Shown here in pieces: positions 8,551 through 57,433 of a stretch of DNA of 64,000 nucleotides; the stretch's first letter is position 1; each line of letters starts with the position of its first letter. The stretch lies in the IMG/VR virus record IMGVR_UViG_3300005056_000001, positions 1-64,000 of that record. One strand, written 5' to 3'. Below the pieces are notes generated by a model, which saw only the letters and a list, made by a program, of their open reading frames with translations, was not told the origin of the DNA and did no database searches. The position numbers and the translations under genes are program-made.

Positions 8551-8751
8551 CTAAAAAAGTCTTCCATGGTAAGTAATACCATCCTTGGTTATTGTTCCTT
8601 CGATGGTTCCTGCTTTTGTACCTGCTTTAGTCAGCTTAAATGTGCCATTACTAGATTTTTCGTAAGCAGTTAAAGCACGGAGCATGTCGTCTTTGTGATA
8701 GCACTTATAGCCCTGTAATATAAAATTATTTTTGTCTTCCTTTAATGACAT
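8551..8751 (-). CDS. hypothetical protein
   Basis: ORF whose start lies inside a 22-bp tandem repeat. Confidence 0.6.
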   Translation of the reverse strand: MSLKEDKNNFILQGYKCYHKDDMLRALTAYEKSSNGTFKLTKAGTKAGTIEGTITKDGITYHGRLF

Positions 8752-8794
8752 AGTTATTGTTCTTTAATGACATAGTTATTGTTCTTTAATGACA
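8740..8794. repeat. 22-bp tandem repeat x2.5
   Basis: ctttaatgacatagttattgtt at 8740 and 8762, partial copy at 8784. Confidence 0.9.
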
Positions 8795-8803
8795 CGATTA
8801 CTG

Positions 8804-9088
8804 TTACACGCAACCAATCTCAATGCGATTGGCAAGTTCAACGATAGAATCAATGGGCATAATCATCGGCAAATATACCGTACAATTGAAGCTGTCAATC
8901 TCGGTACCCTTTCGGTCGTCCAATATAAGAACAGCCCATCCTTTTGTGTTAAATAGATTTACGCTGTCGTTGAAGCGTTTTGTTTCGCCATCAAGATTTT
9001 TTGTACCAAGATTGGAATATAACACAAATGTTGCAATTGCTCCAAGGGCAAAGGTGAATTTTAAAACTGTTGTATAAGCACTTTTCAT
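8804..9088 (-). CDS. hypothetical membrane-anchored protein
   Basis: N-terminal hydrophobic segment. Confidence 0.6.
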   Translation of the reverse strand: MKSAYTTVLKFTFALGAIATFVLYSNLGTKNLDGETKRFNDSVNLFNTKGWAVLILDDRKGTEIDSFNCTVYLPMIMPIDSIVELANRIEIGCV

Positions 9089-48097: not shown

Positions 48098-49072
48098 CTA
48101 GTCCAAAAGACCGTGCATGTCCACAATAATCAAAACCTTATTCTGTAACGACAAGGCATTCTTTTTTAGGTCTGCCTTTAATTTTTTAATGTCAAAATCC
48201 ACCTCAGACTCCTCGGCCCATTTAATGGCATCTTCGTCATTGGAAAACGTTTCCATGGTATCAAATTTTGAGTCTTTTGCCTCACGAATCTGTGATCTGC
48301 GACCTTTCCCTGCCAACATCTCACGAATCTCTCTACCACGGTCGCCATTGCCGTTATTTCTAATGGCTTTACGCTCCATGTAAGACCGTTTTAATTCTCT
48401 TTCGGAGTTGTCATTGCCGTATTTTTGGTAAGCCATGTCGTCATACCCATTTGTGTTCATGTCTTTGTCTCCGCTGTACATATCGTCTCCACTATAAAGC
48501 ATGTCGAAAGTCATGGTGTCATTGTCCATGTTCATATCATTTCTCATGCCACGACCCATGCCCATATCATTCTCCATATTCATGGCATTTCTCATGCCAC
48601 GACCAAAGTCCATATCTTGCGTCTCATAGTCATCCATATCATTTTCGAAGTCCATATCATAGTCGTCCATATCCATGGCATTGTCAAGAAAGCTGTCGGG
48701 GTTAAAATCCATACCCATATTGCTATACGTTGACTTGTATTCGTCGCCTCCATACTCCATTTCATCCACATCCTCGAATCCCATATAGGTAGAAACTAAC
48801 TCGTGTTCGTTGCCCATGTCATAATAAAACTCTTGTTCGCCACAAAGACACTCGTTGTAGTGCTTTGCCACGCTATCATAAGGACACACAATTAATTTGC
48901 CCTTGGAACTTCTTGTGATTATCACGTTTTTCAGTCCGCTTTCGGCAATTGCGTCTTTTACATTTTTCTTGTCCTCGTTTTTTAGTGATTTAAAAACGGC
49001 AGCACTTTTTCCTACTAATACTTCAAGAGCCTCTTTTAATTCTTTTTGGTTGGTAATCCTTTTAGTTGTCAT
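48098..49072 (-). CDS. low-complexity Met/Asp/Asn-rich protein, possible head scaffold/internal protein
   Basis: MDxDxM and GRGMRN repeats; triple GTACATA upstream. Confidence 0.55.
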   Translation of the reverse strand: MTTKRITNQKELKEALEVLVGKSAAVFKSLKNEDKKNVKDAIAESGLKNVIITRSSKGKLIVCPYDSVAKHYNECLCGEQEFYYDMGNEHELVSTYMGFEDVDEMEYGGDEYKSTYSNMGMDFNPDSFLDNAMDMDDYDMDFENDMDDYETQDMDFGRGMRNAMNMENDMGMGRGMRNDMNMDNDTMTFDMLYSGDDMYSGDKDMNTNGYDDMAYQKYGNDNSERELKRSYMERKAIRNNGNGDRGREIREMLAGKGRRSQIREAKDSKFDTMETFSNDEDAIKWAEESEVDFDIKKLKADLKKNALSLQNKVLIIVDMHGLLD

Positions 49073-50767: not shown

Positions 50768-50885
50768 ATGTAGTATAGCAGGGCTGATGATAGATTTATC
50801 ATCAGCCTTTAGTATCGTGTATGTATTGTGCTTGGTCATGATTTGTATTTTTAAATAGGTCTGTGTCGTATCTGTTATAAACTAG

Positions 50886-50972
50886 TAGAAGAAGTGGGAG
50901 TCGAACCCACACGAGTCGTTAGCTCCGAACGGTTTTCAAAACCGTGGCCACCGCCCATTGGCTTGCTCTTCC
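50886..50972 (-). tRNA. tRNA-Ser(TGA)
   Basis: ACGGT-TTTGAAA-ACCGT anticodon arm; long variable arm; TTCGA T loop. Confidence 0.85.
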
Positions 50973-51283
50973 TAATCTACAATACAACAACAAATTTCTT
51001 CAACTAATTGGGTGTCGTTGACAACATATGCGTTTCTTGATGGTAAAAATAAGAATGCCTTTGAATTGTTGACCCGTTCGATAAAGTCTGTTGTTATTAA
51101 ACCGTCTCTTACAGAAAAAATTTCTAGACTTTTCATTACACTTTCGGCAACAGCACTCACGGTTTCGTGTTTTTCAACAACTCTATTTTCGGAATCGCTC
51201 CAAAATACATGGGGACAGGAAACCTCAATAATCAATTCTTCCTTAATTCCATATTTTCCGACCAAATCATTCTTAGTAATCAT
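50972..51283 (-). CDS. hypothetical protein within tRNA cluster
   Basis: ORF. Confidence 0.6.
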   Translation of the reverse strand: MITKNDLVGKYGIKEELIIEVSCPHVFWSDSENRVVEKHETVSAVAESVMKSLEIFSVRDGLITTDFIERVNNSKAFLFLPSRNAYVVNDTQLVEEICCCIVD

Positions 51284-51354
51284 ATTGTATTTTGTTTTGT
51301 TTTGTTTTGTTAATAATCACATAACGCAATTATACAATATTTATTCAAAACTTG

Positions 51355-51437
51355 TGGGGGTAGAAGGACTCGAACCTACTCAGTCATAGACACTAGATTT
51401 ACAGTCTAGCACGGCTCTCCAACTCCGTCGCACTCCC
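51355..51437 (-). tRNA. tRNA-Tyr(GTA)
   Basis: CTAGA-CTGTAAA-TCTAG anticodon arm; long variable arm. Confidence 0.9.
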
Positions 51438-51545
51438 ATATTAACATGGTATATTTTTTCGATTATGACACTTTGTTTGGTTAAGCTATCATGGAAACTT
51501 TCCACGGAAGGGCTTCCACCTTCTTGTCTTCATAAAAGTTTCTTG

Positions 51546-51620
51546 GGCACATGACGGGATTCGAACCCGTGACCCTCGGTACCACAAACCGATGCTCTAA
51601 CCGTCTGAGCTACACGAACC
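51546..51620 (-). tRNA. tRNA-His(GTG)
   Basis: TCGGT-TTGTGGT-ACCGA anticodon arm; G-1 and C73. Confidence 0.9.
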
Positions 51621-51631
51621 ATATATTTTAG

Positions 51632-51704
51632 TGGAGCAGGAGGGACTTGAACCCACATCCTTCGCATTGCAAATGCGATGCTCAGCCAATTGAGCTACTG
51701 TCCC
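51632..51704 (-). tRNA. tRNA-Ala(TGC)
   Basis: TCGCA-TTTGCAA-TGCGA anticodon arm; G3:U70; A73. Confidence 0.92.
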
Positions 51705-51834
51705 GAATCCGACGCTATACTAAGGCAAAAACTGCCAATGACATGAAGCCAACGTTCATATAAGTCAGAAATTACTTTTTGTATCACTAATACAAAGGTT
51801 TTTACACAAAAGTTCCCCAACAATATAATTAAAC

Positions 51835-52125
51835 AAAAAAAACACCAACAAGCTAGTTGTTGGTGTTTAAAAAGAAGTTGTCATACGAGAAGTTAGAAAC
51901 GGTAAACACTATACCGCTCCCCCATACAACTTAAAAACAGGCGCAAGGTAATAAAAACAGGCGCAAACAGGCGAAAGTTTCTAAAACAGGCGCAAGAAGC
52001 AAAAAAAATCTTGATCGTTAGGATTTCGTGGGCTACACACGCCTTTTATTATAACCTTCAACCTCCTTTCGGTCAGTCTACTGAGCTTTGTTTCTTTATC
52101 AAAACAACCAAGACTTTTATATCAC
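51835..52125 (-). ncRNA. candidate structured ncRNA with four TT(G/T)CGCCTGTTT repeats
   Basis: -7-like element at ~52131-52138; no credible ORF; 3' stem-loop; terminator at ~51835-51870. Confidence 0.4.
51935..51995. repeat. AAACAGGCG(C/A)AA x4
   Basis: Copies start at 51935, 51955, 51965 and 51984. Confidence 0.9.
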
Positions 52126-52238
52126 TGTCACAATATATAACAACTTTATACAGTAAACGAATTTTTTGGGCTTTATCTTGAAAAAAAGATTGTTTTTTGT
52201 CATAGTCCGTAAAATAAGCGTTCTTATAGAAAGAAATA

Positions 52239-52718
52239 ATGACAACACAATTAATAAACCATCTTTCAAGCGAGTCTGAGCGTGTCGGTGCCTTGGATAC
52301 CATTTACTCACAAATGATTGTATCAAAAAGCCTGTCTGCCTATCCAAACTTTTCGGATTGGCTTTATAAAAAGGTTGGCCTTGGTATAGTCATGAACCAA
52401 AGGAGTATTGTGCTAAAATACATAAACAAAAGGCTTGTGGGCTTTGTCATACTAAAACATCACAAAGAGCATAAATTATGCACCTTTTTTATACTCGACA
52501 ACTATCGTAAGCAAGGAATTGGTCATAAAATGATGACGGAATCCATGGCATTTTTGAATACATTCGGGAATGTGCCTATTACGATAACAATGTCCGTGTT
52601 TGTTGTTTCGGATTTTAACAAAATTCTTACGAATCACGGTTTTGTCTTTGATTATGTCGTTCAATCCGAATACACAAAGGATGTTCCTGAGTACCACCAC
52701 ATCAGGCCCTTGTCCTAA
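52239..52718 (+). CDS. GNAT acetyltransferase
   Basis: KLCTFFILDNYRKQGIG acetyl-CoA motif A; HGF motif B. Confidence 0.8.
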   Translation: MTTQLINHLSSESERVGALDTIYSQMIVSKSLSAYPNFSDWLYKKVGLGIVMNQRSIVLKYINKRLVGFVILKHHKEHKLCTFFILDNYRKQGIGHKMMTESMAFLNTFGNVPITITMSVFVVSDFNKILTNHGFVFDYVVQSEYTKDVPEYHHIRPLS

Positions 52719-53065
52719 TCCCTTTTGAATGCACTTTTTCTCATCTTGAATCTATTGCATAACTTCTCAATAACACCGTCGGACAATTCACGGTCGCCCT
52801 TTAGTATATCCGAAACATGTTCTTCTGAAACATCCAATATTTTTGCCAAATCTTTTTGGTTTATTTTGTGGTCACACATTAGCGAATTAATCATTTCTAA
52901 TGGAGTACATTCGGTTTCGTCAAAACCATTTCTTGTGTCCCATTCATCAATAAACGTTTCCAATTCCTCTATTTTTGAATCATATAACACATCGTTCTTG
53001 TGGACATAGTCCTCTAACAGGTCACAATATCTATTATACATGTCAATATCTATTATTCGTTTCAT
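52715..53065 (-). CDS. HigA-like HTH antitoxin (orphan)
   Basis: YNRYCDLLE...IEELETFIDEWD...PLEMINSLM...QKDLAKILDVSEEHVSDILKGDRELS. Confidence 0.75.
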   Translation of the reverse strand: MKRIIDIDMYNRYCDLLEDYVHKNDVLYDSKIEELETFIDEWDTRNGFDETECTPLEMINSLMCDHKINQKDLAKILDVSEEHVSDILKGDRELSDGVIEKLCNRFKMRKSAFKRD

Positions 53066-53090
53066 TGCTAATTGGTTTAATTTTATTGTT

Positions 53091-53291
53091 TTAATTGGTG
53101 GCTTGTCTACAGTCAGAGACATCTAACGCTACCATCGTAAGACACAGCCATATGCTGCCTGTGGCATAGATAGATTGATAGATTATATTGGGTAGTTCAG
53201 GGTAAAAAACAGACAGTAAAAGTGCTGATGTTATGGTAACAATAGGTGGTAGTAACAATAATGCCCGTGTGGATGTTTTTTGTAGATTCAT
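53091..53291 (-). CDS. small two-TM membrane protein
   Basis: Two hydrophobic segments. Confidence 0.5.
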   Translation of the reverse strand: MNLQKTSTRALLLLPPIVTITSALLLSVFYPELPNIIYQSIYATGSIWLCLTMVALDVSDCRQATN

Positions 53292-53363: not shown

Positions 53364-54143
53364 CTATACTCCCAATGTTCTTGTATAATTTTGAAATCTA
53401 AGCTTCACGATCTTGGTACGGTCACTATTCCTTAAGACAACACCCTCCGACCTCATTTTTGCGCTATCAGACAGAGCCACCAAGGTTTTTGGAACAACCG
53501 TATTAAGATAGTCCAAAATGGTTTGGTGATCGAAATTTTTGATATCAACAGGGAGCTGAGGAACCTGTGCAAAATTGTATTTTTTACAAAATTCTGTGAG
53601 TTCGGTGTTTGTGAGGAAGTCGTGTCCATACACAATACCGTTGTCTGTTTCGTATTCTCGGAATGACGAAATTTCTTTGATATCCAACTCAAGAATAGAC
53701 AAATCCTTGATTGTTATTACATCAAAAATACGACAGCCGTATTCATTCTTTGTTCCGTACTGTTTTGAGGCCTTACCAACCGATCCACCATAGAGCTCGC
53801 CATAAATGACGGTCAATTCCTTGAAGTCTGTCGGGAAGGTAACCATTTTTCTGAGTTCGTCAACGATATCCAAGGCAGAATTACGACATAGGTCTTTTGA
53901 ATATGTCAAAATCTCTTTTCTTGAACCAATCAAATATTCATTCCCCCAACAGATCATACGAAAATTTGTGCCATCAACCTTTTCCGAGCCACACAGCTCA
54001 TCGTCCAACGAAATGTCGGTTGCAAGCTCATTCGTCAACATACCCCTGTCACCGATTTTGTGGAGCGTTTTGATTGACGGATACTTGGTCAACGTATTAA
54101 TCTTGTCGATGCCATATTTTAAAACAAGTTCTTTTAATTTCAT
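53364..54143 (-). CDS. ATP-dependent RNA ligase (Rnl2-like nucleotidyltransferase)
   Basis: Motif I EKVDGTN, III YGELYG, IIIa IFD, IV EGVVLR, V KLR. Confidence 0.85.
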   Translation of the reverse strand: MKLKELVLKYGIDKINTLTKYPSIKTLHKIGDRGMLTNELATDISLDDELCGSEKVDGTNFRMICWGNEYLIGSRKEILTYSKDLCRNSALDIVDELRKMVTFPTDFKELTVIYGELYGGSVGKASKQYGTKNEYGCRIFDVITIKDLSILELDIKEISSFREYETDNGIVYGHDFLTNTELTEFCKKYNFAQVPQLPVDIKNFDHQTILDYLNTVVPKTLVALSDSAKMRSEGVVLRNSDRTKIVKLRFQNYTRTLGV

Positions 54144-54252: not shown

Positions 54253-56388
54253 TTATGCCTGATACAAATTACCGTCAGACCCAAACAAGATCACACCCTC
54301 CAATGTCGGAATTTCTCCGAGCGCAACAGAAGGGATACCCTTCTCACGGCATAAATCTGCCGTGTGGTTGAACAAGCTTTTGTTTGTGACAATAACACCC
54401 TTATAACCGTCAATGTCGGAAGGCGAGGCAAAATCACCGATAAAAATATCTTTTACATCAACTTCCATGGCATCATCAACCGAAAGATTAAGACCCTCGT
54501 GTAAAAGAGGCATGTCTGTGTCGAATGGTTTGATTTCGATGTTACCAACCATGTTTTTATATGCTGCCTGACTAATTTTGCCACACTGATAAAGATCCGT
54601 AAAATAGGCAACCTTGATACGCTTGGTAAGGATGGCAGGCTTTAGTTGGGTGATAATAATATTCCCCTTGTTGTTGACAATAAATTCCACAACACTTGCC
54701 TTTGTTCCAATTTCTCTTGCCTTCATCACCTCCTTGAGGTATGCAATTTGGTCGCCTGTCAGAACATCATAAATGTCACTACCGACAACATTCCCAAGAT
54801 TGTATTCGCTTGCGTCCCCTTGTACACACTCCCCAAATAGTCCTGTCTTGCCTGTAATCGGGTGGTGGTTATAAACAACCCCACCAACTTTAGACTCGAT
54901 ATATTCTTGGATACCAAGCGCAAAACCAAATCCCCATTCCTCGGGAAACGTGTTGTTGTCTTTTCCTTCCTTAATGATAGCCACAATTTCTGTTTTGAGT
55001 TCTTCTAATGTCACAACCCCAATATTTTTTGTTGGCAACTGACCCGATAGCGGCATCATAGGAGAAGTTCGAAGGATAATTTTTTTGCCCTCAAGACTTG
55101 TTACCCCCCTGAATGAGCACTTGGCAGCAAATGTGAAATCGTCAAGTGCCTCGAGTCCTTTTGTATAGATATCCTTGCACATATTCGAATTAAGTACAAC
55201 AAACACAGGAACCTCAGTTTTGCTATTCCCACGGAGATTTTTAAGATTTTGGTATTTTGTGCCATTCCACTTGTCTCCTTTGCCAATCATATTAAATTGA
55301 AAGATATCTTTTATGTTTCTTCCAAGCTCAAACCCTTTATAGCTTTCTGCCGCCAATGCCGCATAGACATCCGCCACTTTTACTTTGTTTTGGGAGCGTG
55401 AATCGACCACAAGTGTTTCCAAACCAAACCGAACATGCCATTCCAAGACGGTGTGTAGTTGTGAGATCGTTTCCATGCCGTGCATATGCCATGTGCCGTT
55501 TCTCATATAGAGGCAGTTATCCTTTTCCCATCCATTGCGCATTACGGCAGGCTCTAGATTATTTAGATGAACCAATATCTCATTTGCATCCAAATAAATT
55601 TTCCCTTCAGGATCCACCATTGCAGAAAAGCTGTGAAAGCCGTATGATTTGTTGTCATAGGAACAACCCGATTGCTGTCTTAATTGCTCGTTGCTCATGT
55701 ATCCCAATACATAGGCAGGAGTATAATCATAGCCATCAGGCATCCAATTGTCATGGATTTGGTTGTGTGGCGTTGTATTGAATGATGTCCCAAACAGCTC
55801 ATTTAGTGCAGCCAATTCGGAAATAAAAGCCTCCATTTTTCTTCTGTAAGAATGTTTAGGGAAAAGCAGTTCCTCCCACTCGTTTTCTTCAATCTTCTTG
55901 AAGTGTTTTGCAAGAACGTCCCTGTCGTATGAGTCGATTGGGGCAGTCTCGTATTCGGAGTCTTCCTTTTTTACAAAGTGTTTCGTAAGCAAATCCTTGT
56001 CATACGAATCAAGTATAGAACACTCCAACTTATTTTTTAACTCGACCAACTTGTCGCCTGTATTGACCATCCATGCAACATCATAGATTTCTTTTACAAG
56101 CTTTTCGGCCACCCATGTTCGGTTAAGCACCAAATGAGTTTCAGAATCACACAAAGAAAGAATCGCCTTCTTTTCTGTTTCGACGTGTGGATGGTCACTG
56201 AAGGTCATAAACCTCCGACCCTCAAGGATGTCAATATAGATAGCATCAGACAAACCATTTTGTGTGGCTTCTCTGAGCATGGATATTGCGCTCTTGACTC
56301 GAAGGTGTGTAAACTCCTCCCTTGCAACATATGTGATACGTTCTAATTCGGCCTTTAGGTCTACTCTTGGTATTGTTATGCTTTCCAT
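54253..56388 (-). CDS. PPDK/PEP-synthase-like ATP-grasp plus phospho-His swivel protein with unknown N-terminal domain
   Basis: KYQNL, VPVFVV, LRTS, SGQ, IQEYI, GGVVY...PITG, EF, TQLKP; swivel GVIVT...NHTADLCREKGIPSV. Confidence 0.7.
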   Translation of the reverse strand: MESITIPRVDLKAELERITYVAREEFTHLRVKSAISMLREATQNGLSDAIYIDILEGRRFMTFSDHPHVETEKKAILSLCDSETHLVLNRTWVAEKLVKEIYDVAWMVNTGDKLVELKNKLECSILDSYDKDLLTKHFVKKEDSEYETAPIDSYDRDVLAKHFKKIEENEWEELLFPKHSYRRKMEAFISELAALNELFGTSFNTTPHNQIHDNWMPDGYDYTPAYVLGYMSNEQLRQQSGCSYDNKSYGFHSFSAMVDPEGKIYLDANEILVHLNNLEPAVMRNGWEKDNCLYMRNGTWHMHGMETISQLHTVLEWHVRFGLETLVVDSRSQNKVKVADVYAALAAESYKGFELGRNIKDIFQFNMIGKGDKWNGTKYQNLKNLRGNSKTEVPVFVVLNSNMCKDIYTKGLEALDDFTFAAKCSFRGVTSLEGKKIILRTSPMMPLSGQLPTKNIGVVTLEELKTEIVAIIKEGKDNNTFPEEWGFGFALGIQEYIESKVGGVVYNHHPITGKTGLFGECVQGDASEYNLGNVVGSDIYDVLTGDQIAYLKEVMKAREIGTKASVVEFIVNNKGNIIITQLKPAILTKRIKVAYFTDLYQCGKISQAAYKNMVGNIEIKPFDTDMPLLHEGLNLSVDDAMEVDVKDIFIGDFASPSDIDGYKGVIVTNKSLFNHTADLCREKGIPSVALGEIPTLEGVILFGSDGNLYQA

Positions 56389-56515
56389 GATATTTTTTTA
56401 ATGCTATGTTATTGATTGATGTAAATGTATGCAAAAATATATTGTTATCAAAATGTATTTGTTGGTTTTAACATTTCTTTAACACTTCATATTGTTTTTG
56501 CGTTGGTTGAAATCC

Positions 56516-57433
56516 CTAAGAGAGGTATACCATGCTATCCACAAACCTCTTTGTTTTTGGTGGCATATATTCAATGTCATTACAGAACACATCCATACGC
56601 TCTAGCCGATCTGTGATAATGTTGTCCATTGTCTCAGGGAACGCCTTAATGTAATTATTGTCAAGAAATAACTTTTCTATGCTGTCTAGACCACCAATAG
56701 AGTCAGGAATTGTACTTATTCTGTTATCCGAGAAACACAAAAACGTTACATTTTTCAAATTTCCGATATTTGAAGGAATAGCCTCCAACTGATTAAAACG
56801 AAATATTGCATACTCAAGACGTTCTAAATCACAAAAGCTATCAGGAATCTTTTTTAACTTTGTTCCTTGGCAATAAAAATATACCAACGATTTGAGGTTG
56901 CCTAGGTTTTCGGATAGACGTTCTATGTTGTTGCGTCCAATATTTAAAGTGTACAACCTAGGCATTTCATAAATACTATCAGGAATACCTGTCAAAAAAT
57001 TATCGTCCAAGTCTAAACGTTCTAAATTCTCAAGATTACCGATACATTTATTAACAGACGACATCCTGTTGTTTCTAAGACAAAGAGATGTTAAACATCC
57101 AAGGTTGCCTATGGTGTCGGGAAGTGTTGTTATATGATTATTACTAAGGTGTAATTGTTTTAAGTTAGTTAAAAGCTCTATGCTGTCAGGAACATATTTC
57201 ACTCTATTCGAAGTTATTGAAAGCTCCTCCATGTCGTGTATATACATGACCAATGACTTCGGGACACAAGCCCTAGTGTCAAAAATATCATTATCCTCAA
57301 GCCACCCATTCAGCTTTTTATATGACCCTAAATCCAATTCGATATCGTTCGACTTTGCCAACTCAAACCCCAATTCTATATTCGACTCGTCGCCTGTTTT
57401 GAGCAAAGACATAATTTTTTCTTTTCTGTACAT
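56516..57433 (-). CDS. leucine-rich repeat protein
   Basis: About 9-10 repeats of a 23-aa LxxLxLxxNxLxxLPxxIxxL pattern. Confidence 0.9.
   Translation of the reverse strand: MYRKEKIMSLLKTGDESNIELGFELAKSNDIELDLGSYKKLNGWLEDNDIFDTRACVPKSLVMYIHDMEELSITSNRVKYVPDSIELLTNLKQLHLSNNHITTLPDTIGNLGCLTSLCLRNNRMSSVNKCIGNLENLERLDLDDNFLTGIPDSIYEMPRLYTLNIGRNNIERLSENLGNLKSLVYFYCQGTKLKKIPDSFCDLERLEYAIFRFNQLEAIPSNIGNLKNVTFLCFSDNRISTIPDSIGGLDSIEKLFLDNNYIKAFPETMDNIITDRLERMDVFCNDIEYMPPKTKRFVDSMVYLS

What the first reader, a model, noticed from the sequence alone, without database searches (positions are those of the whole stretch)
51835..52138. Repeat-bearing non-coding unit upstream of the tRNA cluster
Seen: a -7-like element (TATATTG, ~52131-52138) followed by about 280 nt with no credible ORF. 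This stretch holds a CCGAAAGG tetraloop, four TT(G/T)CGCCTGTTT copies spaced 20/10/19 bp, a stem AAGTTGT...ACAACTT enclosing CGGTA..TACCG, and a terminator. Inference: either a sponge or antitoxin-mimic RNA (by analogy to CsrB or phage pseudo-ToxI), or helically phased iteron-like DNA sites.
Basis: partly seen in the sequence, partly recalled or inferred. Interest (0 to 1): 0.6.

Follow-up and report, generated by a model that had tools for sequence, protein, structure and literature searches.

The report
Orphan repeat-bearing RNA unit beside phage tRNAs
A 368-kb phage of Bacteroidota carries, just upstream of its only four tRNA genes, a roughly 290-base stretch that codes for no protein, ends in a strong transcription stop signal and holds four copies of one short motif; it is most likely a new small phage RNA, but no relatives or expression data exist to prove it or show what it does.

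Summary
On the minus strand, 52138-51833 contains the TATATTG box, four copies of CGCCTGTTT, a nested 3' hairpin, and a perfect 12-bp hairpin followed by T8. The four copies compare with 12 in the whole 368-kb genome, where about 1.9 are expected. Only the CCGAAAGG "tetraloop" fails: it has a 2-bp stem and no fold forms it.

The unit is non-coding. The repeats fall in different reading frames, the phage does not use Shine-Dalgarno sites, and no gene is called there. The terminator is an orphan, 850 nt from the nearest upstream same-strand gene. The minus strand folds much better than the plus strand (-66 vs -45 kcal/mol). A 21-nt box found only twice in the genome marks both the 5' edge of the unit and the tRNA leader.

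My best reading is an independently transcribed ~290-nt structured phage RNA, with the repeats as a multivalent binding platform (confidence about 0.4). The live rivals are phased DNA sites, a read-through tail or attenuating leader, and functionless duplication.

Nothing matches Rfam, ToxI, CsrB, CRISPR repeats or 401 Bacteroidota genomes. The phage is effectively a singleton, so conservation cannot be tested. Interest is moderate.

The parts
51833..52138 (-). Whole candidate non-coding transcription unit (about 290-305 nt)
   Evidence: It lies in the 534-nt gap between tRNA-Ala and the GNAT gene. JGI calls no gene here. The small overlapping ORFs match no family. Rfam finds nothing.
52131..52143 (-). 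Promoter-like -7 box GTTATATATTG
   Evidence: TAnnTTTG-type boxes are enriched 30-57 nt before gene starts in this phage. A near-identical box, GTTATATATTTG, lies just upstream of the first tRNA of Tenacibaculum phage pT24. The match to the consensus is weak and there is no -33 TTTG.
52113..52133 (-). 21-nt box TTGTnnnAGTGATAyAAAAGT, copy 1, at the 5' edge of the unit
   Evidence: The box occurs exactly twice in 368 kb. Both copies are in this gap and on the same strand.
52004..52118 (-). Predicted 5' structured domain: a 16-bp long-range helix enclosing two hairpins; it contains CCGAAAGG and AAAGGAGGT
   Evidence: Folds. z = -2.16 on the minus strand against -1.04 on the plus strand. GAAAGGAGG occurs only here in the genome, and the phage does not use SD sites.
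51983..51995 (-). Repeat copy 1, TTGCGCCTGTTTT
51965..51976 (-). Repeat copy 2, variant TTTCGCCTGTTT; its last bases overlap copy 3
51953..51966 (-). Repeat copy 3, TTGCGCCTGTTTTT
51933..51946 (-). Repeat copy 4, TTGCGCCTGTTTTT
51875..51932 (-). 3' hairpin (outer stem, bulge, inner stem CGGTA/TACCG, 7-nt loop)
   Evidence: MFE -19.7, z = -3.39 on the minus strand against -9.8, z = -1.85 on the plus strand. It holds six G-U pairs that would be A-C mismatches on the other strand.
51833..51868 (-). Intrinsic terminator: 12-bp perfect stem, 5-nt loop, T8
   Evidence: It is oriented for the minus strand only, since the plus-strand reading has no T tail. It lies 850 nt from the nearest upstream same-strand gene, whereas 60 of 81 intergenic terminators lie within 50 nt of one.
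51815..51832 (-). Second -7-like box (TTTAATTATATTGTTGG) directly after the terminator
   Evidence: It fits the genome-wide module of hairpin, T-run and GTTTAATATTGT.
51774..51797 (-). Copy 2 of the 21-nt box, 70 nt upstream of tRNA-Ala
50885..51704 (-). tRNA cluster Ala(UGC), His(GUG), Tyr(GUA), Ser(UGA): the phage's only tRNAs

Best explanation
The stretch is a stand-alone gene for a small structured RNA of about 290 nt. It is read on the minus strand, from just downstream of the box at 52131-52143 to the terminator at 51868-51833. It lies immediately upstream of the phage's only tRNA cluster and is probably controlled in a similar way.

The predicted RNA has four modules:
- a 5' domain closed by a long-range helix;
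- a middle segment with four copies of UUGCGCCUGUUU(U);
- a 58-nt 3' hairpin;
- the terminator hairpin.

I infer that the four identical cores act as a multivalent binding platform, that is, a decoy or sponge that ties up several copies of one host or phage factor, either a protein or a complementary RNA.

**Shown:** the anatomy; that the unit is non-coding; the strand-specific fold; the orphan terminator; and the private box shared with the tRNA leader.

**Inferred:** that the unit has its own promoter; that the RNA is stable; and that the repeats act in RNA rather than in DNA.
For: - **Orphan terminator.** It is a strong terminator oriented for the minus strand only. It sits 850 nt from the nearest upstream same-strand gene, whereas 60 of 81 intergenic terminator-like hairpins lie within 50 nt of one.
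- **Non-coding.** The repeat spacing of 19/10/20 puts the cores in different frames. GGAGG lies upstream of only 6 of 556 genes. No gene is called here, and the overlapping ORFs match no family.
- **Strand asymmetry of the fold.** Excluding the terminator, the minus strand gives -66.0 kcal/mol (z -1.87) and the plus strand -45.0 (z -0.29). The sub-domains on the minus strand score z -2.2, -4.2 and -3.4. The whole unit scores z -2.75.
- **Constraint on the cores.** The cores are kept perfect while the spacers have diverged. Four of the genome's 12 copies lie within 60 nt.
- **Shared box.** A 21-nt box occurs only twice in 368 kb, at the 5' edge of the unit and in the tRNA leader.
- **Promoter-like box.** It belongs to a type that is enriched upstream of genes. 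It closely resembles the box in front of the tRNA cluster of phage pT24.
- **Neighbourhood.** The surrounding genes deal with RNA: an RNA ligase and the four tRNAs.
Against: - There is no expression evidence.
- There is no conservation evidence. The only other contig carrying the locus is 100% identical, and no relative with this locus exists in any collection searched.
- The promoter box is a weak match and lacks a -33 element.
- The HTH operon upstream has no terminator of its own, so the terminator could serve read-through from it.
- The repeats are not predicted to be exposed: P(unpaired) is 0.39-0.60 against a mean of 0.41 for the whole RNA.
- The motif shows no excess complementarity to phage translation start regions.
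- Its complement shows no conserved target in 151 Bacteroidota genomes.
- The one Bacteroides RNA-binding protein with a published motif did not bind a similar C/U-rich sequence.
- The spacing of 19/10/20 and the phased T-tracts fit a DNA-level role at least as well.
Confidence: 0.4

Rival explanations
1. The repeats act in DNA. They form an array of four binding sites on roughly one face of the helix, with phased T-tracts that bend the DNA. A phage or host DNA-binding protein, for example the adjacent Xre-type HTH protein, would bind them. The array would then serve as an upstream activating or operator region for the tRNA promoter 105-175 bp away, much like the FIS/UP regions of stable-RNA promoters. 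Less likely, it serves as an iteron-type origin.
For: - Core starts are spaced 19, 10 and 20 bp, close to whole helical turns.
- T-tract centres recur every 9-11 or 20 bp over about 70 bp (read).
- An HTH gene lies 580 nt upstream.
- Other intergenic regions of this phage carry tandem repeats of 19-22 bp next to promoters.
- A separate class of paired YGTTAA sites 11 bp apart marks 29 intergenic regions, so phased DNA sites are a habit of this genome.
Against: - The outermost sites are still about 120 degrees apart, and three spacings are a small sample.
- HTH dimers usually bind inverted repeats, not direct ones.
- A strong terminator lies between the array and the tRNA promoter.
- For the origin version: the cumulative GC-skew minimum is near 95 kb with no inflection at 52 kb; the region is not a divergence point of transcription; PolB lies near 266 kb and no DnaB or D5 match was found.
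- A DNA role does not explain the strand-specific fold or the orphan terminator.
Confidence: 0.22
2. The stretch is not a separate gene. It is part of a longer transcript: either the long 3' tail of the RNA ligase-HTH operon reading antisense through the GNAT gene, or a leader of the tRNA operon whose terminator acts as an attenuator setting how much transcription reaches the tRNAs.
For: - The HTH gene and the GNAT gene converge with overlapping stops, and no terminator lies between 52800 and 51868.
- The terminator sits 130 nt before tRNA-Ala.
- The unit and the tRNA leader share a private box.
Against: - A -7-like box lies directly after the terminator, as in the genome-wide terminator-plus-promoter module. 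The tRNAs therefore seem to have their own start.
- No alternative antiterminator pairing was evident in the folds.
- T-box and other leader families do not match.
Confidence: 0.15
3. The repeats have no function. They are the decayed product of slippage duplications of a ~20-bp unit in a spacer, and the hairpins are incidental.
For: - This phage has other simple tandem duplications of 19-22 bp in spacers.
- Tandem arrays that happen to contain the same 11-mer are common in metagenomes and unrelated to this phage.
Against: - The cores are perfect while the spacers have diverged to near-random identity, which points to constraint on the cores.
- The gap is one of only 14 longer than 300 nt in a genome that is 90% coding.
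- It does not explain the orphan terminator or the strand-specific fold.
Confidence: 0.1

Closest known systems
Small stable RNAs encoded in the tRNA gene cluster of phage T4 (species 1 and 2, also called RNA C and D; from my own knowledge)
   Same: A phage-encoded, non-coding, structured RNA of unknown role placed in or next to the phage's tRNA genes and apparently expressed with them.
   Different: Sequence relation could not be tested because no reference was at hand. The T4 RNAs are cut out of the tRNA precursor, whereas this unit has its own terminator and carries four short repeats.
Protein-sponge RNAs (CsrB/RsmZ for CsrA, CrcZ for Hfq/Crc)
   Same: One short motif repeated several times in a terminator-ended small RNA, which suggests titration of a single partner.
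   Different: The motif differs (no GGA or A-rich boxes). The copies are not displayed in hairpin loops. Bacteroides lack CsrA and Hfq. Rfam models do not match.
ToxI and phage pseudo-ToxI (type III antitoxin RNAs)
   Same: The order promoter, direct repeats, terminator, with something functional downstream.
   Different: ToxI repeats are regular tandem units of about 36 nt, each processed by ToxN. Here the cores are 11-13 nt at 19/10/20 spacing. What follows is a tRNA cluster, and the neighbouring ORFs match no ToxN family.
Upstream activating regions of stable-RNA promoters (FIS sites, phased A-tracts) and iteron arrays of phage and plasmid origins
   Same: Several direct sites at about whole helical turns, with phased T-tracts, upstream of a tRNA promoter.
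   Different: No initiator gene lies nearby and there is no skew signal. The sites lie inside a unit bounded by a terminator that folds better as RNA on one strand.
GOLLD and ROOL large RNAs of phages (often beside tRNA genes; from my own knowledge) and RNA anti-CRISPRs (PMC10651486)
   Same: Phage non-coding RNAs, the first two typically next to tRNAs and the last acting as decoys.
   Different: No Rfam match to GOLLD or ROOL, and this unit is much smaller. The hairpin matches no repeat in 401 Bacteroidota genomes, and at 54 nt it does not fit CRISPR repeat lengths.

Membership tests
Type III toxin-antitoxin antitoxin RNA (ToxI-like or pseudo-ToxI) | Regular tandem direct repeats of about 34-40 nt | tested here: not met
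   The cores are 11-13 nt at irregular spacing of 19/10/20, with unlike spacers.
Type III toxin-antitoxin antitoxin RNA (ToxI-like or pseudo-ToxI) | A ToxN/AbiQ-type endoribonuclease gene next to the repeats, or for a phage mimic, sequence likeness to the host's ToxI | tested here: not met
   The downstream and flanking ORFs have no Pfam, PHROG or NCBIfam match of that kind. The host is unknown, so likeness to a host ToxI could not be tested.
CsrB/RsmZ-type sponge RNA | Many GGA motifs in hairpin loops, and CsrA present in the host | tested here: not met
   The repeated motif is UUGCGCCUGUUU. There is no Rfam match. Bacteroides are described as lacking CsrA and Hfq (PMC13370968 abstract).
Iteron-type replication origin | Three or more direct repeats in helical phase | tested here: inconclusive
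   Four cores lie at 19/10/20 bp. They are roughly but not strictly in phase, with about 120 degrees between the outer sites.
Iteron-type replication origin | An adjacent initiator or replication genes, and a strand-composition switch | tested here: not met
   The neighbours are GNAT, HTH, RNA ligase and tRNAs. PolB lies near 266 kb, and no DnaB or D5 match was found. The skew minimum is near 95 kb.
RNA anti-CRISPR (solitary CRISPR repeat unit) | Close likeness in sequence and length to a host CRISPR repeat | tested here: inconclusive
   The ends of the hairpin gave 0 matches in 401 sampled Bacteroidota genomes. Its 54-nt length is unlike known repeats. The host genome is unknown, so absence is not shown.
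Any described RNA family (Rfam 15) | Match to a covariance model | tested here: not met
   Only the tRNAs pass the gathering scores. With E up to 10, only noise appears in 51705-52238.
Bacteroidota housekeeping promoter | -7 box TAnnTTTG with TTTG near -33 | tested here: inconclusive
   The box TATATTG is one T short and no TTTG lies at the right distance. The variant is about 2.4-fold enriched upstream of genes.
Intrinsic terminator | GC-containing hairpin followed by a T-run on the transcribed strand | tested here: met
   12 perfect pairs (4 of them G-C), a 5-nt loop and T8, on the minus strand only.
Phage packaging (pac) site | Lies in or beside the terminase genes | tested here: not met
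   The only large-terminase match is at 299.6-301.5 kb.

The most novel reading that the evidence does not exclude
The unit is a counter-defence decoy RNA. Each repeat contains CUGUU, the same letters as positions 32-36 of the anticodon loops of GUN tRNAs (Tyr, His, Asn, Asp). The phage places this RNA next to its own tRNA-Tyr and tRNA-His genes and an RNA ligase. Four such sites on one abundant RNA could soak up a host anticodon nuclease that cuts this tRNA group. The spare tRNAs and the ligase would then replace and repair what is still cut. This rests on context and a 5-letter likeness only. The repeats do not fold as anticodon stem-loops.
Probability: 0.05. Interest if true: 0.8.

Novelty: new member of a known kind. 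Interest (0 to 1): 0.35.

Why it matters
Phage non-coding RNAs are badly under-annotated, and almost nothing is known about them in phages of Bacteroidota, whose hosts lack the usual RNA chaperones. If this is a real RNA, it would found a new family: a small RNA with a fourfold repeated motif, placed with the tRNAs and an RNA ligase of a 368-kb phage. That would offer a handle on how such phages manage or protect the host's translation machinery. If the repeats instead work in DNA, they would mark a control region for phage stable-RNA genes. Either way, the value is limited until a transcript or a relative is found.

Tried and rejected
**Searches for relatives or for the element itself**
- blastn of the gap against GenBank phages found nothing.
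- A two-copy repeat pattern in IMG/VR found only coding repeats. In JGI metagenomes it found 120 or more hits, all unrelated tandem or coding repeats; none shares proteins with the phage. L163 is an unrelated promoter region.
- A tRNA-Ala-based pattern in IMG/VR gave 0 hits.
- Protein-anchored searches in IMG/VR with the RNA ligase, the 711-aa protein, the helicase and an alignment found no relatives.
- The word search with the 711-aa and HTH neighbours found only themselves.
- The closest homologues of the RNA ligase (58-60%) are bacterial, including Saprospiraceae, and share no synteny.
- The full HMMER search with the 711-aa protein found a paralogue in the same phage and one 1,030-nt contig (about 60% amino-acid identity) that ends 25 nt after the gene. 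That record is not held for further search.
- The second contig carrying the locus is 100% identical.

**Searches for a host counterpart or target**
- blastn of the unit against 401 Bacteroidota genomes gave chance-level hits only.
- The complement of the repeat is scattered at about one copy per genome, with no conserved target.
- The hairpin tested as a CRISPR repeat gave 0 of 401 genomes.
- The motif shows no excess complementarity to phage start regions or to the tRNA precursor.

**Other readings rejected**
- RbpB sponge: the published RbpB motif differs, and a similar C/U-rich probe was not bound.
- Coding readings: no SD use in this phage, repeats out of frame, ORFs without any family match.
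- Origin and pac site: skew and gene positions speak against both.
- Distant relative pT24: the syntenic gap has no tRNAs or similar repeats, and its own tRNA cluster has no such unit.

**Not done**

Full report
**Setting**

The window is the first 64 kb of a 368,109-bp virus record with terminal repeats, 38% G+C. Several lines point to a Bacteroidota host:
- Genes lack Shine-Dalgarno sites and have A-rich leaders.
- The Bacteroidota -7 box TAnnTTTG is enriched 30-57 nt before start codons.
- The closest homologues of its RNA ligase are from Saprospiraceae and other Bacteroidota.
- The nearest named phages, by a helicase at about 38% identity, infect Tenacibaculum.

The finding lies on the minus strand, in a 534-nt gap. 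On one side is tRNA-Ala (51631-51704, minus strand), the first of the phage's only four tRNAs: Ala, His, Tyr and Ser. On the other side is a GNAT acetyltransferase gene on the plus strand (52239-52718). Further upstream on the minus strand lie an Xre-type HTH gene (52715-53122), an RNA ligase (53364-54143) and a 711-aa protein of unknown function. The genome is about 90% coding and has only 14 gaps longer than 300 nt.

**The observation**

The repeats are not chance. CGCCTGTTT occurs 12 times in the genome on both strands against 1.9 expected, and four of those copies lie within 60 nt here. Three 11-nt cores are identical and the fourth differs at one base, while the spacers between them are only 40-50% alike. 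That pattern argues for constraint on the cores and against a recent duplication.

Two details are weaker than stated. CCGAAAGG has only a 2-bp stem and is not formed in any predicted fold. The TATATTG box is a one-base-short version of the -7 consensus without a -33 element, and it is only about 2.4-fold enriched upstream of genes.

**It is not coding**

- The core spacing of 19/10/20 puts the copies in different reading frames.
- The strong AAAGGAGGT in the 5' part cannot be taken as a ribosome site, because GGAGG precedes only 6 of 556 genes and none of 139 AGGAGG sites precedes a called start.
- JGI's gene calls list nothing between the GNAT gene and the ORF inside the tRNA cluster.
- The three small ORFs that overlap the unit match no PHROG or NCBIfam family.

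**Evidence for a transcript on the minus strand**

1. The hairpin at 51868-51840 with T8 is the only terminator-like site in 51300-52800. It works on the minus strand only, since the plus-strand reading has no T tail.
2. In a census of perfect-stem terminators across the genome, 60 of 81 intergenic ones lie within 50 nt of the end of a same-strand gene. This one is 850 nt from the nearest such gene. Something unannotated is therefore terminated here.
3. Excluding the terminator, the minus-strand RNA folds at -66.0 kcal/mol (z -1.87) against -45.0 (z -0.29) for the plus strand. The 5' domain, the repeat segment and the 3' hairpin score z -2.2, -4.2 and -3.4 on the minus strand. The 3' hairpin uses six G-U pairs, which do not exist on the other strand. 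The z-score of the repeat segment is probably inflated, because shuffling destroys the self-complementary GCGC in the cores.
4. A 21-nt box, TTGTnnnAGTGATAyAAAA(A)GT, occurs exactly twice in 368 kb, both times on the minus strand. One copy is at the 5' edge of the unit (52133-52113) and the other is 70 nt upstream of tRNA-Ala (51797-51774). The unit and the tRNA cluster thus share a private 5' signal, which is different from the two widespread intergenic cassettes of this phage.
5. The sequence right after the terminator, a T-run followed by GTTTAATTATATTG, fits a module seen at many gene junctions in this genome: terminator hairpin, T-run, then a -7-like box. The tRNAs therefore probably have their own start, and the unit is bounded on both sides.
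6. The box at 52131-52143 is nearly the same as the one in front of the first tRNA of Tenacibaculum phage pT24.

**What the repeats do is open**

As RNA, they are not predicted to be exposed: their mean P(unpaired) of 0.39-0.60 compares with 0.41 for the whole molecule. They tend to pair with one another through GCGC. I found no partner for them:
- no excess complementarity to the start regions of 556 phage genes compared with shuffled motifs, and none to the tRNA precursor;
- the complement is scattered at about one copy per genome in 80 of 151 Bacteroidota genomes, so there is no conserved RNA target;
- the one Bacteroides RNA-binding protein with a tested motif bound GUAGGAUA but not a C/U-rich probe resembling this motif (10.1101/2021.04.27.441718).

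As DNA, the cores sit at 19, 10 and 20 bp, and the T-tracts recur at roughly one or two helical turns over about 70 bp. That suits a bound or bent upstream region for the tRNA promoter 105-175 bp away, and the phage uses phased paired sites elsewhere. A replication origin is less likely. The cumulative skew minimum is near 95 kb with no inflection here. The polymerase is near 266 kb, and no DnaB or D5 match exists. A packaging site is unlikely because the large terminase is at 300 kb.

**Comparison with known systems**

Rfam gives nothing but tRNAs, even at E = 10. The ToxI analogy fails on repeat length and regularity and on the absence of a toxin gene. The CsrB analogy fails on the motif and on the host phylum. 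From memory, the 3' hairpin begins and ends like a Cas13b repeat, but it is 54 nt long and its ends matched nothing in 401 sampled Bacteroidota genomes. I treat that as an unconfirmed lead. In kind, the closest things are the small stable RNAs in the T4 tRNA cluster and other phage RNAs found beside tRNA genes. The closest DNA-level analogue is the upstream activating region of a stable-RNA promoter.

**Conservation cannot be tested**

The only other contig with this locus, from a second JGI sample, is identical over 8.6 kb. Pattern and protein-anchored searches of IMG/VR, JGI metagenomes, GenBank phages and the 5.8-billion-protein collection found no relative carrying this locus. A full HMMER search with the neighbouring 711-aa protein found one paralogue in the same phage. 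It also found a single 1,030-nt contig at about 60% protein identity that stops 25 nt after the gene. Relatives therefore exist in nature but are not assembled. The distant relative pT24 has a four-tRNA cluster but no comparable unit.

**Verdict**

The best-supported reading is a new, independently terminated small structured RNA gene of a singleton 368-kb Bacteroidota phage, placed with its tRNAs and RNA ligase, with the four cores serving as a multivalent binding platform (confidence about 0.4). A DNA-level array (0.22), a read-through tail or attenuating leader (0.15) and functionless duplication (0.10) remain open. Interest is moderate: the anatomy is clean and unlike any described family, but without a transcript, a relative or a partner it stays a candidate.

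Noticed in passing
whole genome; in the window e.g. 2724, 31281, 33292, 58768 (minus strand): An intergenic cassette recurs 29 times: two YGTTAA sites 11 bp apart, usually followed by a hairpin (AAAATCCGT...ACGGATTTTT), a TATATTTG box and often GTAAGGCAATCA, about 100 nt before gene starts. It looks like a phage promoter class with paired activator sites. It is absent from the gap studied here.
   Followed up: partly
whole genome; in the window e.g. upstream of 21126, 46148, 47984, 49072, 49989: GTACATA is the most enriched upstream word, present in 41 of 255 upstream regions against 3.4 expected, mostly 17-60 nt before starts. It is probably a second phage-specific promoter class. Three copies 21-22 nt apart precede the gene ending at 49072.
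   Followed up: partly
window 52239-52718 (+) and 52715-53122 (-): The GNAT acetyltransferase gene and the Xre-type HTH gene converge, and their stop codons overlap by 4 nt. Neither has a terminator of its own, so each transcript must run antisense into the other. A GNAT beside tRNA genes recalls tRNA-acetylating toxins, but this was not tested.
   Followed up: no
window 53364-54143 (-): The phage RNA ligase (PF09414) is 58-60% identical to chromosomal genes of Bacteroidota such as Saprospiraceae, where it sits next to clpB. It was probably acquired from a host lineage. Together with the tRNAs it suggests a tRNA repair or replacement module.
   Followed up: partly
window 54253-57433 (-) and genome 71.9-75.3 kb: There are paralogous modules of leucine-rich-repeat proteins followed by a 581- or 711-aa protein with no known family (39% identity between the two).
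   Followed up: no
window 50972-51283 (-): A 103-aa ORF lies inside the tRNA cluster, between tRNA-Ser and tRNA-Tyr. It has only a weak PHROG match.
   Followed up: no
genome 120176-120255 and window 8740-8805: There are simple tandem repeats in spacers: four copies of a 19-20-bp promoter-like unit just before the gene at 120258, and three copies of a 22-bp unit at 8740.
   Followed up: no
window 52060-52068 (-): AAAGGAGGT, a perfect complement to the 16S anti-Shine-Dalgarno tail, sits in the 5' domain of the unit. This phage does not use such sites, and GAAAGGAGG occurs nowhere else in its genome. Unexplained.
   Followed up: partly
L275 3095-3532 (Tenacibaculum phage pT24, record 191594-192031): A 438-nt unannotated gap inside pT24's tRNA cluster contains D-arm-like and T-arm-like pieces about 200 nt apart. 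This may be a tRNA gene interrupted by an insertion or intron.
   Followed up: no
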